Made by a program: the position numbers and the translations under genes. Shown one piece after another: positions 6,677 to 32,389 of a DNA stretch of 64,000 nucleotides. The notes under the pieces are model-generated. The model was given only the letters and a program-made list of their open reading frames with translations. It was not told where the DNA came from and did not search any database. Each line of letters starts with the position of its first letter. The stretch's first letter is position 1. The stretch is taken from positions 1-64,000 of the IMG/VR virus record IMGVR_UViG_3300007735_000804, one strand, 5' to 3'.

Positions 6677-7387
6677 TCAGTATTTTTCAAGTGCATACAT
6701 TCCATTCTTTTCCACAATCGCAGAGCAAGTATCCACAAAATCACCACAACACATATAAGTAATCTTTCCAAAGTTTCTTATATTTCCAGAATGAATATGT
6801 CCACAAATTACACCAGCATACTTCTTATCTCTTTGAGCACAATAAGAAGCAATATCAGTTTCATATTGATTGATATAATTCTTACCACGCACACTATTCT
6901 TCAGGAAATACACTAATGAAAAACGGAAAAATCTTTCTAACCATAAACTCAATGGTGTAATAATTTCATATCCTTTATTAAAAATGAGTTGTTTCCAAGA
7001 CCCAGAAGAATACTCAGAATACTTATCTCCATGAACACAAAGGAATTTATTTCCGTTCGAGTCTTCGTGAATATATTCATCCACCATTCTAAAATTCTTA
7101 TGTTTGAAATCACAGTACCGACGAATCTGACCTTCGTGATTTCCAAGAATATAAACGACTTCTGTGCCTTTCTTGACTAGGTTAAAAATCTGATGAACGC
7201 ACTCAGTATGCTCTTTTGTCCATCGAGTATTATATTTTTCCATACAGTAGATGTCTATAATATCACCTACTAAAACTAGTTTTTTAGTTTTGAGTTCTTT
7301 GAGAAACTTTAGAAATTTTTGAGTGTTACATCGTGGAGTGCCCAGATGCACATCAGAAATAAAGACTGTATCGTAAGTCATAATCAA
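6677..7387 (-). CDS. Calcineurin-like metallophosphoesterase, UDP-2,3-diacylglucosamine hydrolase (LpxH-like) family
   Basis: ISDVHLG, GDIID, GNHE, HGD and CGHIH motifs. Confidence 0.8.
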   Translation of the reverse strand: MIMTYDTVFISDVHLGTPRCNTQKFLKFLKELKTKKLVLVGDIIDIYCMEKYNTRWTKEHTECVHQIFNLVKKGTEVVYILGNHEGQIRRYCDFKHKNFRMVDEYIHEDSNGNKFLCVHGDKYSEYSSGSWKQLIFNKGYEIITPLSLWLERFFRFSLVYFLKNSVRGKNYINQYETDIASYCAQRDKKYAGVICGHIHSGNIRNFGKITYMCCGDFVDTCSAIVEKNGMYALEKY

Positions 7388-7545
7388 AATCTTTTTGGGG
7401 TATATTCCATTCCTTCTAAAAGTGCATCTAACATTGCTCCATATTCTTTAAATCTTCTGTCTCCTGCGATGAAACATCTTTGTCTCATCCATACCGCATC
7501 TGCCAGAAGTTTAATCTGGTCTTCAGAAAGTTCTAGGTTTTTCAT
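7384..7545 (-). CDS. 53-aa micro-protein, paralogue of 31147..31314 (not in ORF track)
   Basis: Hand translation: MKNLELSEDQIKLLADAVWMRQRCFIAGDRRFKEYGAMLDALLEGMEYTPKRF. Confidence 0.75.
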   Translation of the reverse strand: MKNLELSEDQIKLLADAVWMRQRCFIAGDRRFKEYGAMLDALLEGMEYTPKRF

Positions 7546-30502: not shown

Positions 30503-30577
30503 TGTTTTGAATTGTTGCCTTAGTATTATAAGGGTTGTTGAGTGTTTAGTCAAGTGTGCCAGTGAAGTAACTGGCAA

Positions 30578-30651
30578 TCGGGCATAGAGGATTTGAACCT
30601 CTGGCCTTTCCGCCCCAAACGGAACGCGCTACCAAACTGCGCTAATGCCCG
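30578..30651 (-). tRNA. tRNA-Pro(UGG)
   Basis: Cloverleaf; TTCCG-TT TGG GG-CGGAA; GGTTCAAATCC. Confidence 0.93.
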
Positions 30652-30691
30652 TTGCGTTGAGTGGTCTTGCCTCCCAACAGAAGTAATTATA

Positions 30692-30844
30692 CTACTTCTT
30701 GTGCCCCCTGTCAAACGGAGCCCAGTGCTGCCATCCGTATTTATGAATTGCCCAGATACCCATAATAGGCAGAACAATCAAAAGATATCCAATAATACCA
30801 AGAGTATAAGGATTTTCTAATACCCATCTTGCAAAGTGTCCCAT
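30692..30844 (-). CDS. 50-aa single-TM protein (not in ORF track)
   Basis: MGHFARWVLENPYTLGIIGYLLIVLPIMGIWAIHKYGWQHWAPFDRGHKK; TAATG coupling. Confidence 0.65.
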   Translation of the reverse strand: MGHFARWVLENPYTLGIIGYLLIVLPIMGIWAIHKYGWQHWAPFDRGHKK

Positions 30845-31065
30845 TAATATCCCCTCCAAGTCTTAAATTCGTAGTAAAAATATTGGTCAAGAATTTTATC
30901 ATCTAATGGAGCATTCTCTTCCCTATGTGCCCACTCAACACAGAAATCTACAATCTTATGGTCGTGTAATGAACTATGTCCCCACATTCTTACGAATGCA
31001 GTTGCAGCAAAGTGATATCGTTGCCTAATGTGCGGTTCCGTTTCCCTTATAATCTTTGGAGTCAT
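30844..31065 (-). CDS. Hypothetical cyanophage protein
   Basis: 73 aa ending YFYYEFKTWRGY. Confidence 0.6.
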   Translation of the reverse strand: MTPKIIRETEPHIRQRYHFAATAFVRMWGHSSLHDHKIVDFCVEWAHREENAPLDDKILDQYFYYEFKTWRGY

Positions 31066-31147
31066 AGTATCCTCCTTTTGTTCCGAAATAGAGTGTTGTT
31101 AAAACAAACGGGACTGAAACAAATAAAAGTGCTTTTGCGAGTAACAT
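31025..31147 (-). CDS. ndhP: NDH-1L small subunit NdhP homologue, 40 aa (not in ORF track)
   Basis: MLLAKALLFVSVPFVLTTLYFGTKGGYYDSKDYKGNGTAH matches the NdhP TM plus FGTxNGFYDxDxYHGNGSAH signature. Confidence 0.85.
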   Translation of the reverse strand: MLLAKALLFVSVPFVLTTLYFGTKGGYYDSKDYKGNGTAH

Positions 31148-31314
31148 TATGAAAATACTCCTGGAACATAATCAATTCTTTCACGAAGTTCATCTAGAAG
31201 GACGCCATACTCCTTGAACCTTCTATCACCAGCAATGAAACATCTTTGTCTCATCCATACTGCATCTGCGATTAATTTTAGTTCGTAATCTGAAAAATCT
31301 TTAAAGCGTTCCAT
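31147..31314 (-). CDS. 55-aa micro-protein, paralogue of 7384..7545
   Basis: Core ADAVWMRQRCFIAGDRRFKEYG. Confidence 0.75.
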   Translation of the reverse strand: MERFKDFSDYELKLIADAVWMRQRCFIAGDRRFKEYGVLLDELRERIDYVPGVFS

Positions 31315-31321
31315 ATTTCTC

Positions 31322-31417
31322 CTAGTGGGGTGGATATGCATGATTGAGTCCCCATACAATGAAGCACCCTATCGCACCAAAAATAGTTAATGCCTTGAAC
31401 AATAGATTAGTATTCAT
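31322..31417 (-). CDS. 31-aa single-TM peptide resembling the NdhQ C-terminus
   Basis: MNTNLLFKALTIFGAIGCFIVWGLNHAYPPH versus recalled NdhQ ...ILGFIAGLIWWALHTAY. Confidence 0.45.
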   Translation of the reverse strand: MNTNLLFKALTIFGAIGCFIVWGLNHAYPPH

Positions 31418-31511
31418 TATCCTCATCCTCGTAAGTAGATGGTTCTTCTATCTTTTGCTGTAAAACTCTTTGTTGTAGTTCTTGAATATCTTCGTCCGTA
31501 ATAGATATCAT
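31407..31511 (-). CDS. 34-aa acidic micro-protein
   Basis: MISITDEDIQELQQRVLQQKIEEPSTYEDEDNEY; ATGA coupling. Confidence 0.5.
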   Translation of the reverse strand: MISITDEDIQELQQRVLQQKIEEPSTYEDEDNEY

Positions 31512-31687
31512 TTGTCCTTGAGTAGTTCTTCTATTCTTTGACGCATATTTATGCTGTCCTGTTTCATATAGTCCCGAAGAGAATATCCCTTCTGACCTCT
31601 CATAATACAGGTGCCTTGATAGAACATCGTGGCTGCAAATACTAACAGGAGAACGATACCAATTATTTCAGGGTAATGTTGAGCCAT
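31508..31687 (-). CDS. 59-aa single-TM protein
   Basis: MAQHYPEIIGIVLLLVFAATMFYQG...RIEELLKDK. Confidence 0.6.
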   Translation of the reverse strand: MAQHYPEIIGIVLLLVFAATMFYQGTCIMRGQKGYSLRDYMKQDSINMRQRIEELLKDK

Positions 31688-31869
31688 GGTAGTACTGGTG
31701 GAATAACTCCGATAAGTCTTAACAATCCTTCAGCAAATAGAGCAAGAACCACCCAACCAACACACATAGAAATAATGGAAGCATTCCGATTGTGTTGTCG
31801 TATAGCAGCATCAATCATCTCCTGGACTTCAGAACGAGATACATAATCGTCATCAAACGGTTCCATCAT
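31663..31869 (-). CDS. Small membrane protein
   Basis: HNRNASIISMCVGWVVLALFAEGLLRL. Confidence 0.65.
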   Translation of the reverse strand: MMEPFDDDYVSRSEVQEMIDAAIRQHNRNASIISMCVGWVVLALFAEGLLRLIGVIPPVLPWLNITLK

Positions 31870-32015
31870 TTCTCATCTCCAAGAAACTTTGCAAGAGGAT
31901 CCTTGCGAGTTTTAACTATTTCAACTGCTCTCTTGTAGAACATATTATCCATGTTCCCAGAGGCTTCAAAAGTCTCCTTGATCTTCACCCAGTTCTCATA
32001 GGTGTGCTGATCCAT
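31866..32015 (-). CDS. 49-aa hypothetical protein, first gene after an early promoter
   Basis: MDQHTYENWVKIKETFEASGNMDNMFYKRAVEIVK... Confidence 0.65.
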   Translation of the reverse strand: MDQHTYENWVKIKETFEASGNMDNMFYKRAVEIVKTRKDPLAKFLGDEK

Positions 32016-32131
32016 AGGTTTAAAGTTTGAATACTACTAGTTATGCTAGTGAGTAATTCTACTATGTCAAGTTTGTGTTGATATAAAAATATACATTAAG
32101 ACAATCTTAAAATTGTAATATTTTTTTTAAA

Positions 32132-32215
32132 CGGAAAGGGTGGGATTCGAACCCACGGTGCTATTAACACGACAGTTTTCAAGACTGTTTCCTTAAACCA
32201 CTCGGACACCTTTCC
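32132..32215 (-). tRNA. tRNA-Ser(UGA)
   Basis: ACAGT-CT TGA AA-ACTGT; long variable arm. Confidence 0.93.
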
Positions 32216-32222
32216 ATATAAA

Positions 32223-32294
32223 TGGGAAATGCTAGATTTGAACTAGCGACCTCTGCGTTATCAGCACATTGCTCTACCGCTGAGCTAATCTCCC
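32223..32294 (-). tRNA. tRNA-Ile(GAU)
   Basis: TGTG-CT GAT AA-CGCA; cloverleaf. Confidence 0.9.
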
Positions 32295-32297
32295 ATA

Positions 32298-32389
32298 CGG
32301 AGGATGTTGGATTTGAACCAACGGATGCACTTAAAGTACATCGGGGGATTAGCAATCCCCTGCATTAAACCTAACTCTGCCAATCCTCC
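32298..32389 (-). tRNA. tRNA-Ser(GCU)
   Basis: GGGGA-TT GCT AA-TCCCC; long variable arm. Confidence 0.92.

What the first reader, a model, noticed from the sequence alone, without database searches (positions are those of the whole stretch)
30692..32070. Early operon of nine coupled micro-ORFs, mostly single-TM
Seen: a TTGACA promoter at about 32070 is followed by nine ORFs of 31-73 aa joined by ATGA/TAATG or short overlaps. Five have a TM helix and six are absent from the ORF track. Since one is ndhP, the rest (e.g. MGHFARW...WQHWAPF and MAQHYPE...MFYQG) are candidates for a peptide toolkit that remodels thylakoid electron-transport complexes.
Basis: partly seen in the sequence, partly recalled or inferred. 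Interest (0 to 1): 0.7.

Follow-up and report, generated by a model that had tools for sequence, protein, structure and literature searches.

The report
Cyanophage micro-gene cluster with ndhP, ndhQ
A freshwater cyanobacterial virus carries a tightly packed, conserved string of nine tiny genes; two copy the host's two smallest NDH-1 subunits (NdhP, already known in such viruses, and NdhQ, found in no paper I could search), and the other seven are real genes of unknown function.

Summary
Nine minus-strand ORFs of 31-73 aa (30692-32015) follow a TTGACA promoter at 32070. They are joined by ATGA/TAATG or short overlaps, and five carry one TM helix. All nine are real genes: the order is kept across about 90 cyanomyovirus loci, in-frame pN/pS is 0.15-0.52 against 0.8-3.5 in shifted frames, and six belong to PHROG families.

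The window comes from a 213-kb T4-like cyanophage from freshwater viromes. ORF7 is NdhP. The new result is that ORF5 (31322-31417) is a homologue of NdhQ, the second small single-helix subunit that, with NdhP, holds NdhD1 in NDH-1L. In six related contigs ndhQ and ndhP are 4-5 nt apart. In others PTOX, gnd or talC lie between them.

Its two named examples (ORF9, ORF3) match no subunit of any solved complex. ORF1, ORF2 and ORF3 have sporadic homologues in picocyanobacteria. ORF8 folds confidently into a helical bundle with no structural match.

Most likely function: an early operon that supplies NdhP and NdhQ to keep NDH-1L, and so cyclic electron flow and ATP supply, running during infection. 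Binding and expression are untested.

The parts
32043..32070 (-). Sigma-70-type promoter (TTGACA, 16-nt spacer, TAGCAT) about 28 nt upstream of the o1 start codon
   Evidence: One search gives 10 of 12 consensus matches. One search finds TTGAC at the same offset in 59 of 71 distinct upstream sequences of o1 homologues. One search finds no T4-type late box (TATAAATA) upstream.
31866..32015 (-). o1: 49-aa soluble helical protein, function unknown
   Evidence: Found in 84 of 90 phage loci and 11 GenBank phage records. pN/pS is 0.15 in frame against 1.3-1.7 out of frame. Multi-copy homologues occur in 20 of 151 picocyanobacterial genomes.
31663..31869 (-). o2: 68-aa tail-anchored membrane protein (phrog_1096; labelled 'Gp7 family' in some records), function unknown
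   Evidence: One search gives E=7e-38 to phrog_1096. The core, including the TM helix, is nearly invariant across 65 distinct sequences. pN/pS is 0.21. Homologues lie in 8 of 151 host-family genomes and are named 'hypothetical protein [Prochlorococcus marinus]'. The profile has no PDB match.
31508..31687 (-). o3: 59-aa protein with an N-terminal TM helix and a charged C-terminal helix (phrog_1953), function unknown
   Evidence: Shown. Present in 50 phage records. Rare Cyanobium homologues exist. It is fused in frame to o4 in L009 (DSL-LC02) and L045. The profile has no PDB match.
31407..31511 (-). o4: 34-aa acidic soluble peptide; probable functional partner of o3
   Evidence: Found in 66-74 of 90 loci. 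The EEPSTYEDE motif is conserved. pN/pS is 0.28. The o3-o4 fusion is seen in two phages. The window copy differs by an in-frame 3-aa deletion.
31322..31417 (-). o5 = ndhQ homologue: 31 aa, one TM helix, C-terminal WGLxHAYP motif
   Evidence: The phage-only profile A2 hits one small ORF in 132 of 151 picocyanobacterial genomes. The joint alignment A5 shows the shared motif. A5 hits solved NdhQ chains 6khi_Q at E=1.2e-5, 6l7o_Q at 1.2e-4 and 6hum_Q at 3.8e-3. A5 also retrieves NdhQ orthologues across cyanobacteria, including the Thermosynechococcus-type sequence. It lies 4-5 nt from ndhP in six loci.
31147..31314 (-). o6: 55-aa soluble protein (phrog_2064), function unknown
   Evidence: One search gives E=8e-22. 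Present in 13 of 90 loci, between gnd and PTOX where those genes occur. A paralogue lies at 7387-7533. No host match was found.
31025..31147 (-). o7 = ndhP: 40 aa, one TM helix, C-terminal GGYYDS..YKGNGTAH motif
   Evidence: One search gives E=4.3e-8 to 6khi_P and 4e-7 to 6hum_P. It is 74-76% identical to NdhP of freshwater Cyanobium and Synechococcus. phrog_2173 is found in 5 of 5 host genomes tested. tblastn finds it in 369 phage records.
30844..31065 (-). o8: 73-aa soluble helical-bundle protein (phrog_593), function unknown; its start lies inside ndhP
   Evidence: Shown. It follows ndhP at once in 37 of 39 loci. The AlphaFold2 model has pLDDT 90 and pTM 0.78. Neither PDB nor AFDB clusters give a structural match. 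No host match was found.
30692..30844 (-). o9: 50-aa single-TM protein (phrog_1184), function unknown
   Evidence: One search gives E=4e-25. Present in 296 phage records, all cyanophage. It follows o8 directly in 46 of 60 loci. There is no credible host match and no PDB match.
30686..30714 (-). Perfect sigma-70 consensus (TTGACA, 17-nt spacer, TATAAT) across the o9 stop codon, upstream of tRNA-Pro
   Evidence: One search gives 12 of 12 consensus matches. tRNA-Pro lies at 30578-30651.
30578..30651 (-). tRNA-Pro(TGG), the downstream boundary of the cluster
32131..32389 (-). tRNA-Ser, tRNA-Ile and tRNA-Ser, the upstream boundary of the cluster

Best explanation
The region is a polycistronic, translationally coupled operon of nine real micro-genes in a T4-like freshwater cyanomyovirus. 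A host-type (sigma-70) promoter, of the kind that drives early genes in cyanomyoviruses, precedes it.

Two of the products are viral copies of the two smallest subunits of cyanobacterial NDH-1L:
- NdhP (o7), clearly of host origin.
- NdhQ (o5), shortened to little more than the TM helix and the C-terminal W-G-L-x-x-A-Y motif.

In the host, NdhP and NdhQ both bind only NdhD1. Together they keep the NdhD1/NdhF1 module attached to NDH-1M. Loss of one halves NDH-1L, and loss of both abolishes it (PMC11794437).

Inferred mechanism:
1. Early in infection the phage makes its own NdhP and NdhQ.
2. They insert into the thylakoid membrane and take the NdhD1 sites.
3. This keeps NDH-1L assembled while host protein synthesis declines.
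4. [quoted passage not shown]

The other seven products are conserved phage proteins of unknown role. o8 and o9 are so tightly linked to ndhP/ndhQ that a related role is the best guess. o3 and o4 act together, because they are fused in two phages.

What is shown: coding status, conservation, synteny, homology, and promoter presence and conservation. What is inferred: timing, membrane insertion, binding to NdhD1, and the physiological effect.
For: Coding status:
- Colinear order o1-o2-(o3)-o4-ndhQ-[insert]-(o6)-ndhP-o8-o9 in about 90 loci.
- Median dN/dS is 0.07-0.42.
- pN/pS is 0.15-0.52 in frame against 0.8-3.5 in shifted frames.
- Six ORFs belong to PHROG families.

NdhP:
- solved NdhP chains; 74-76% identity to Cyanobium NdhP; positive control in host genomes.

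NdhQ:
- Phage-only profile finds one ORF per genome in 132 of 151 host genomes.
- Shared motif in the joint alignment.
- The top three PDB hits of the joint profile are all NdhQ; the next hit (PetM) has E=1.7.
- The same profile retrieves the Thermosynechococcus-type NdhQ and its orthologues.
- The phage-only profile reaches other cyanobacterial NdhQ sequences at E=2e-5 to 0.3, scaled to the size of the PDB.

Linkage:
- ndhQ and ndhP are 4-5 nt apart in six loci.
- PTOX, gnd or talC lie between them elsewhere; petE, gnd, talC and zwf occur at the locus in isolates.

Promoter:
-.
- Early genes of cyanomyoviruses are thought to use an unmodified host sigma-70 polymerase (PMC2984593).

Function of NdhP and NdhQ:
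- PMC11794437 section 9; PMC12038448; PMC4131877.

Weak expression hint:
- Contigs 90-100% like o1-o3 and ndhP occur in freshwater metatranscriptome runs. The tool itself warns that this does not show transcription.
Against: - No experiment or transcript map exists for this phage, so 'early' rests on promoter type alone.
- The co-fold of host NdhD1 with phage NdhP and o5 gave no answer (score 0.16, below the mark of 0.34).
- The NdhQ link rests on about 24-30 aligned residues that are mostly a TM helix, and the single-sequence search did not find NdhQ.
- Phage NdhQ lacks the N-terminal cytoplasmic segment of canonical NdhQ, so it may behave differently.
- Four marine phages with ndhP have no ndhQ anywhere in their genomes, so the pair is not obligatory.
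- This phage itself lacks PTOX, gnd and talC.
- Nothing ties o1-o4, o6, o8 or o9 to NDH-1 beyond gene linkage.
Confidence: 0.6

Rival explanations
1. One reading: all or most of the nine peptides form a toolkit in which each docks onto a thylakoid electron-transport complex (PSI, PSII, b6f, NDH-1, oxidases, ATP synthase).
For: - Two of the nine are NDH-1 subunits.
- Five have a TM helix.
- o8 and o9 are coupled to ndhP/ndhQ in most loci.
- The neighbours in relatives are electron-transport and pentose-phosphate genes.
- o2 has an almost invariant TM helix, which points to a specific partner in the membrane.
Against: - Profiles of o2, o3 and o9 hit no chain of any solved structure; the PDB profile search did find NdhP, NdhQ and PetM chains for o5 and o7.
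- Four of the nine are soluble.
- o6, o8 and o9 have no host homologue.
- The o8 fold matches nothing known.
Confidence: 0.15
2. The seven non-Ndh ORFs are generic early phage proteins, for example for host takeover, superinfection exclusion or anti-defence, like the many small early ORFs in plastic regions of T4-like genomes. They sit beside ndhP and ndhQ only because this is a mosaic insertion hot-spot next to the tRNA cluster.
For: - Modules come and go between relatives: o3, o6, ndhP, ndhQ and the inserts are each present or absent.
- The same small genes sit in different genome contexts: next to terminase in S-RIM8 and S-RIM50, next to psbA/psbD in DSL-LC02, and after tRNAs here.
- o6, o8 and o9 occur only in phages.
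- Established knowledge: T4 early regions are dense in small, dispensable, often membrane-active ORFs.
Against: - The order ndhP-o8-o9 with overlapping starts is kept in 37 of 39 and 46 of 60 loci, even between marine and freshwater phages. That is more than a hot-spot predicts.
- o1, o2 and o3 have homologues in host chromosomes, as auxiliary metabolic genes do.
Confidence: 0.3
3. Phage NdhP and NdhQ do not support NDH-1L but modify it. The truncated NdhQ and the viral NdhP compete with the host subunits and shift the balance between NDH-1L and the CO2-uptake forms, or change its regulation, as part of the known viral shutdown of carbon fixation.
For: - Phage NdhQ lacks the whole N-terminal cytoplasmic segment.
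- It is only 39-55% identical to host NdhQ, while NdhP is 74-76% identical to host NdhP.
- dN/dS of o5 is the highest of the nine, at 0.42.
Against: - The C-terminal motif and the TM helix are conserved under purifying selection.
- Picocyanobacterial NdhQ has itself a short N-terminus.
- NdhP keeps every invariant residue of the family motif.
- No evidence for inhibition exists.
Confidence: 0.12
4. o5 is not NdhQ. The resemblance is a chance match between hydrophobic helices.
For: - The match is short, and a single-sequence search gave only weak CP43 and V-ATPase helix hits (E >= 0.05).
- The co-fold gave no support.
Against: - There is a single hit per genome in 132 of 151 genomes, with E down to 2e-8 from a phage-only profile.
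- The invariant W, A and Y of the C-terminal motif lie outside the hydrophobic core.
- All significant PDB hits are NdhQ.
- It is directly adjacent to ndhP in six loci.
Confidence: 0.07

Closest known systems
Cyanophage ndhP (auxiliary metabolic gene; annotated in Prochlorococcus phage P-TIM68; noted in PMC12801897 and PMC10452541)
   Same: o7 is a 40-aa single-helix protein with the family's C-terminal motif. It matches solved NdhP chains and lies next to gnd, zwf or petF-type genes in many phages.
   Different: Nothing essential differs. Here it sits in a freshwater phage and is most like Cyanobium NdhP. It is far more common than the literature states: 369 phage records, nearly all labelled hypothetical or left unannotated.
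Cyanobacterial NdhQ (NDH-1L subunit; chains Q of 6HUM, 6KHI, 6L7O)
   Same: o5 has a single TM helix followed by the W-(G/A)-L-x-x-A-Y motif. The host counterpart is single-copy and nearly universal. The gene is linked to ndhP.
   Different: The viral form has 28-35 aa and lacks the conserved N-terminal cytoplasmic segment (SDLNRGIMKF-GAD in most cyanobacteria). Picocyanobacteria keep only a short acidic stub there. Binding to NdhD1 has not been shown. I found no paper in the searchable library that reports ndhQ in a phage.
Cyanomyovirus gene clusters for photosynthetic electron transport and the pentose-phosphate pathway (PTOX, petE, petF, talC, gnd, zwf, cp12)
   Same: The locus is the same: in relatives PTOX, gnd and talC lie between ndhQ and ndhP, and petE and zwf lie beside them.
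   Different: In this phage the locus holds only the micro-genes. PTOX, gnd and talC were not found anywhere in its genome.
Small early ORFs in plastic regions of T4-like phage genomes
   Same: Runs of overlapping ORFs under 100 aa behind sigma-70-type promoters, with mosaic presence and absence, many of them membrane-active.
   Different: No sequence relationship to any T4 gene was found. Several members here have cyanobacterial homologues (ndhP, ndhQ, o1, o2, o3).

Membership tests
NdhP (NDH-1L subunit P) | About 40-45 aa with one N-terminal TM helix | tested here: met
   o7 has 40 aa and a KD19 maximum of 2.04 at residues 1-19.
NdhP (NDH-1L subunit P) | Significant sequence similarity to NdhP chains of solved NDH-1L, including the C-terminal G-x-YD..Y.GNG.AH motif | tested here: met
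   E=4.3e-8 to 6khi_P and 4e-7 to 6hum_P. The motif is invariant in 13 phage sequences. o7 is 74-76% identical to Cyanobium NdhP.
NdhP (NDH-1L subunit P) | Binds NdhD1 and stabilises NDH-1L | tested here: inconclusive
   NdhP was a non-partner chain in the co-fold, which gave no answer. This needs biochemistry.
NdhQ (NDH-1L subunit Q) | Small protein with a single TM helix ending in W-(G/A)-L-x-x-A-Y | tested here: met
   o5 has 31 aa and a KD19 maximum of 1.94. W, A and Y are invariant across 25 host and phage sequences.
NdhQ (NDH-1L subunit Q) | Profile similarity to NdhQ chains of solved NDH-1L | tested here: met
   The host+phage profile A5 hits 6khi_Q at E=1.2e-5, 6l7o_Q at 1.2e-4 and 6hum_Q at 3.8e-3, with no other significant hit. 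The phage-only profile is weaker: E=2e-5 to 0.3 against NdhQ of other cyanobacteria. The single sequence does not hit NdhQ.
NdhQ (NDH-1L subunit Q) | Orthologous to a single-copy, nearly universal gene of thylakoid-bearing cyanobacteria | tested here: met
   Mostly one hit per genome (two in seven genomes) in 132 of 151 picocyanobacterial genomes and in 76 of 251 genomes across the phylum. The hit in a Thermosynechococcus-size genome carries the sequence segment of the solved NdhQ chain.
NdhQ (NDH-1L subunit Q) | Conserved N-terminal cytoplasmic segment (SDLNRGIMKF-GAD-P) | tested here: not met
   The segment is absent from all phage copies and reduced to a short acidic stub in picocyanobacteria. 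o5 is therefore filed as a truncated homologue, not a full-length NdhQ.
NdhQ (NDH-1L subunit Q) | Binds NdhD1 and stabilises NDH-1L together with NdhP | tested here: inconclusive
   The co-fold of host NdhD1 (an orthologue scoring 820 bits to 6hum_D) with phage NdhP and o5 scored 0.16 against a mark of 0.34. The tool says this is evidence neither way.
Early (sigma-70-dependent) operon of a T4-like cyanophage | -35 and -10 hexamers with 16-18 nt spacing upstream of the first gene, conserved among relatives | tested here: met
   Shown. Similar promoters recur on the same strand through the window.
Early (sigma-70-dependent) operon of a T4-like cyanophage | One transcript made early in infection | not testable with these tools
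   Only metagenomic and metatranscriptomic contigs of relatives exist, and they show no direction or timing. The scan found no strong terminator between the promoter and tRNA-Pro, only a weak terminator-like hairpin inside o1.
Known small subunits of PSI, PSII, cytochrome b6f, ATP synthase or other NDH-1 subunits (for o2, o3, o9) | Detectable sequence or profile similarity to a chain of a solved complex | tested here: not met
   Single sequences gave nothing. Profiles A6, A7 and A8 gave nothing below E=0.4 and nothing photosynthetic.

The most novel reading that the evidence does not exclude
The conserved core ndhQ-(ndhP)-o8-o9, perhaps together with o2 and o3/o4, is a virus-specific NDH-1 remodelling module. 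Under this reading o9 (single TM helix) and o8 (a fold with no structural match found) would be phage-invented accessory subunits or assembly factors. They would dock with viral NdhP and NdhQ on the NdhD1/NdhF1 arm and give infected cells a modified NDH-1L tuned for cyclic electron flow.
Probability: 0.15. Interest if true: 0.85.

Novelty: new member of a known kind. Interest (0 to 1): 0.58.

Why it matters
Cyanophages are known to carry photosynthesis genes, and NDH-1 has been implicated through ndhI, ndhD and ndhP.

Many phages carry both NdhP and NdhQ. These are exactly the two subunits whose joint loss abolishes NDH-1L, and in some phages the two genes are adjacent. That makes a specific hypothesis testable: the virus protects the NdhD1/NdhF1 module, and so cyclic electron flow and ATP supply, during infection.

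The work also exposes an annotation gap:
- NdhQ and NdhP have no Pfam or NCBIfam model.
- NdhQ is labelled 'hypothetical' or not called in picocyanobacteria.
- NdhQ is not called in any of the four isolate phages that carry it.
- ndhP is present in 369 phage records although a recent paper calls it rare.

Finally, the work defines seven conserved micro-proteins as concrete candidates for experiments. These include a tail-anchored protein with an almost invariant TM helix, and o8, whose predicted fold matched nothing in the PDB or AFDB-cluster searches.

Tried and rejected
- Pfam and NCBIfam scans of all nine ORFs and of the host homologues found nothing above noise.
- Single-sequence PDB searches of o2, o3, o5 and o9 found no NdhQ. 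o5 gave only a weak CP43 helix hit at E=0.05, which I reject as compositional because the profile points to NdhQ instead.
- The co-fold of host NdhD1 with phage NdhP and o5 gave 'no answer'. I do not use it either way.
- tblastn of host NdhQ against GenBank phages found no match, because the query is short and the low-complexity filter is on. tblastn of o5 found one record only, so HMM searches on fetched loci were used instead.
- Atlas look-alikes for o2, o8 and o9 returned only their own unnamed clusters or ones named 'Gp7'. The weak ATP-cone-like structural neighbours of an o8 relative were not reproduced by Foldseek on my own model, so I dropped that lead.
- Metatranscriptome contigs cover parts of the region, but the runs may hold DNA and come from relatives. 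This is not counted as expression evidence.
- The search for a T4-type late promoter upstream of o1 found none.
- The idea that the ORFs are spurious is rejected by the frame-specific selection signal.
Full report
**What the window is.** The window is the first 64 kb of a single 213,274-bp virus record. DNA and protein matches are almost all to T4-like cyanomyoviruses of Synechococcus. Near-identical sequence occurs in viral, riverine, lake and freshwater metagenomes. The phage NdhP is most like that of freshwater Cyanobium and Synechococcus. The host is therefore probably a freshwater picocyanobacterium.

**Check of the observation.** Between a tRNA-Ser/Ile/Ser group (32131-32389) and tRNA-Pro (30578-30651), the minus strand carries nine ORFs of 31-73 aa. 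Their junctions are 4-nt ATGA overlaps, 1-nt TAATG overlaps, overlaps of 11, 25 and 41 nt, and one 7-nt gap. TTGACA lies at 32070, followed after 16 nt by TAGCAT, about 28 nt upstream of the first start codon. By my reading of the upstream sequences, seven of the nine starts have a purine-rich Shine-Dalgarno-like stretch 5-13 nt upstream. Five ORFs (o2, o3, o5, o7, o9) have one clear hydrophobic helix.

**Are they genes?**
- A scan of IMG/VR with o2 returned 80 close loci, and isolates added 10 more.
- tblastn and HMM searches show a colinear array, o1-o2-(o3)-o4-o5-[variable insert]-(o6)-o7-o8-o9. Modules are present or absent, but the order is fixed.
- ORF lengths and start codons are kept.
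- Median pairwise dN/dS is 0.07-0.42.
- Pooled pN/pS is 0.15-0.52 in the annotated frame but 0.8-3.5 in the two shifted frames, for every one of the nine.
- Six ORFs belong to PHROG families of unknown function.
- In GenBank phages, o9 occurs in 296 records, ndhP in 369, o3 in 50, o1 in 11 and o4 in 4, all of them cyanophages.
- o8 gives a confident AlphaFold2 model of a small helical bundle, with pLDDT 90 and pTM 0.78.

All nine are real protein-coding genes.

**The promoter.** The -35 box lies at the same offset in 59 of 71 distinct upstream sequences of o1 homologues, followed by a conserved TAG(C/T)AT. Genome-wide, sigma-70-like sites with good -10 boxes cluster on the minus strand of this part of the genome. 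Cyanomyoviruses lack the T4 factors that re-programme the polymerase, and their early genes are thought to use the unmodified host sigma-70 enzyme (PMC2984593). No T4-type late box precedes o1. "Early operon" is thus a reasonable inference, not a demonstration. Metatranscriptome contigs overlap parts of the region but prove nothing.

**ORF7 is NdhP.** It matches NdhP chains of solved NDH-1L at E=4e-8. It keeps the invariant C-terminal motif. It is 74-76% identical to Cyanobium NdhP. Its PHROG family is found in every host genome tested. Viral ndhP is already in the literature (PMC12801897, PMC10452541).

**ORF5 is an NdhQ homologue (the main new result).**
- A profile made only from phage o5 sequences finds a small ORF (mostly one per genome) in 132 of 151 genomes of the host family, with E down to 2e-8.
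- These host ORFs are 29-40 aa single-helix proteins ending in WGL(T/S)(N/H)AYP, the motif of o5.
- One member is on record only as "hypothetical protein". It sits as a stand-alone gene between thiamine and riboflavin genes in the core chromosome.
- The joint profile hits three distinct NdhQ sequences among PDB chains at E=1.2e-5, 1.2e-4 and 3.8e-3. The next hit, PetM, has E=1.7.
- The same profile finds one ORF per genome in 76 of 251 genomes of the phylum.
- Sixteen of these were read. All are NdhQ-type proteins with the N-terminal SDLNRGIMKF-GAD segment. One, from a genome of Thermosynechococcus size, contains the sequence segment of the solved NdhQ chain.
- The phage-only profile reaches these at E=2e-5 to 0.3, scaled to PDB size.
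- The window's o5 is 39-55% identical to host NdhQ over 29-31 positions.
- The phage form lacks the N-terminal cytoplasmic segment, so I call it a truncated homologue.
- No Pfam or NCBIfam model exists for either small subunit, which explains the missing annotation.
- The gene is uncalled in all four isolate phages that carry it: S-SRM01, DSL-LC03, DSL-LC02 and S-SCSM2R.
- At least 362 IMG/VR stretches encode it.
- Two searches of the paper library found no report of ndhQ in a phage.

**Linkage.**
- Of the 90 loci, 65 carry ndhQ, 40 carry ndhP and 28 carry both.
- In six loci the two genes are 4-5 nt apart.
- Where they are separated, the inserts encode PTOX (AOX family, ending directly before ndhP), 6-phosphogluconate dehydrogenase and transaldolase.
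- Isolates show petE, gnd, talC and zwf at the same place.
- ndhP is followed at once by o8 in 37 of 39 loci, and o8 by o9 in 46 of 60.
- Four marine phages with ndhP have no ndhQ in their whole genomes.
- The window's own genome lacks PTOX, gnd and talC.

**What NdhP and NdhQ do.** Both contact only NdhD1. Deleting either one breaks about half of NDH-1L down to NDH-1M. Deleting both breaks almost all of it and lowers NDH-dependent cyclic electron flow (PMC11794437 section 9; also PMC4131877, PMC12038448). The most economical reading is that the phage supplies both clamps to keep NDH-1L working during infection. A co-fold of host NdhD1 (identified) with the two phage peptides gave no answer.

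**The other seven ORFs.**
- Profiles of o2, o3 and o9 match no solved chain.
- o6, o8 and o9 have no credible host homologue.
- o2 has homologues at E about 1e-15 in 8 of 151 host-family genomes, named hypothetical proteins of Prochlorococcus marinus.
- o3 has rare Cyanobium homologues.
- o1 has multi-copy homologues in 20 of 151 host genomes.
- o3 and o4 are one fused ORF in DSL-LC02 and one IMG/VR contig, so they probably act together.
- o8 has no structural match in the PDB or AFDB-cluster searches.

Their functions remain open. Gene linkage makes an NDH-related role for o8 and o9 the best guess, and generic early host-takeover roles the main rival.

**Verdict.** This is a new member of a known kind (a photosynthetic auxiliary gene), and it sits in a well-defined set of conserved micro-proteins worth testing.

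Noticed in passing
L009:2824-3111 (Synechococcus phage DSL-LC02) and L045:2248-2541; window 31407-31687: o3 and o4, separate genes with an ATGA overlap in the window, form a single fused ORF of 96-98 aa in two other phages. This is a gene fusion or fission event that ties the two together functionally.
   Followed up: partly
window 31025-31080: The Shine-Dalgarno sequence and ATG of o8 (AAAGGAGGATACTATG) lie inside the codons for the conserved KGGYYD motif of ndhP. The 82-nt offset between the ndhP and o8 starts, and so the overlap, is kept in all nine loci listed with ATG-start ndhP.
   Followed up: partly
window 30686-30714: A perfect TTGACA, 17-nt spacer, TATAAT promoter spans the stop codon of o9, just upstream of tRNA-Pro. 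Another promoter (TTGACT, 17-nt spacer, TATAAT) at 30525-30553 precedes the next small ORF.
   Followed up: no
window 7387-7533 (minus strand); genome about 183201-183302: o6 has a paralogue with 65% identity elsewhere in the window, and a weak third copy in the genome.
   Followed up: no
host loci L187-L206, L207-L214: Picocyanobacterial NdhQ is a 29-40 aa gene, recorded as 'hypothetical protein' where a name is on record. In the freshwater Synechococcus/Cyanobium contigs looked at it lies between a thiamine-phosphate synthase gene and ribF. Neither NdhP nor NdhQ has a Pfam or NCBIfam model.
   Followed up: partly
L182-L184 and one search hits (for example seven places in G100): o1-like 55-60 aa proteins occur in up to seven copies per genome in some genomes of the host family. 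One is annotated as a hypothetical protein of a dinoflagellate cyanobiont.
   Followed up: no
L176-L178 (genomes of 1.6-1.9 Mb): o2-family proteins of 58 aa, sharing the EMI..AIRRHNR..IIS core, are encoded in Prochlorococcus chromosomes. More than 1,200 protein clusters were found in the large database.
   Followed up: partly
GenBank phage records: tblastn finds ndhP in 369 phage records. Among the 25 records listed it is labelled as ndhP only in P-TIM68 and is otherwise hypothetical, uncalled or under neighbouring dehydrogenase labels. This contradicts the statement in PMC12801897 that it is uncommon in cyanophages.
   Followed up: partly
window 10774, 33562, 41736 (minus strand): Several -35 boxes sit inside or directly after G+C-rich hairpins followed by T runs. 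These look like terminator-promoter junctions between early transcription units.
   Followed up: no
whole genome G000: tblastn with the versions from relatives finds no PTOX, gnd or talC in this phage, although relatives carry them inside this very cluster.
   Followed up: partly
L001, L033, L039, L048, L053, L063, L089: o9 comes in two forms. The long form has 50 aa and a C-terminal HKYxWQHWAPFD tail. The short form has 37-46 aa and lacks the tail.
   Followed up: no
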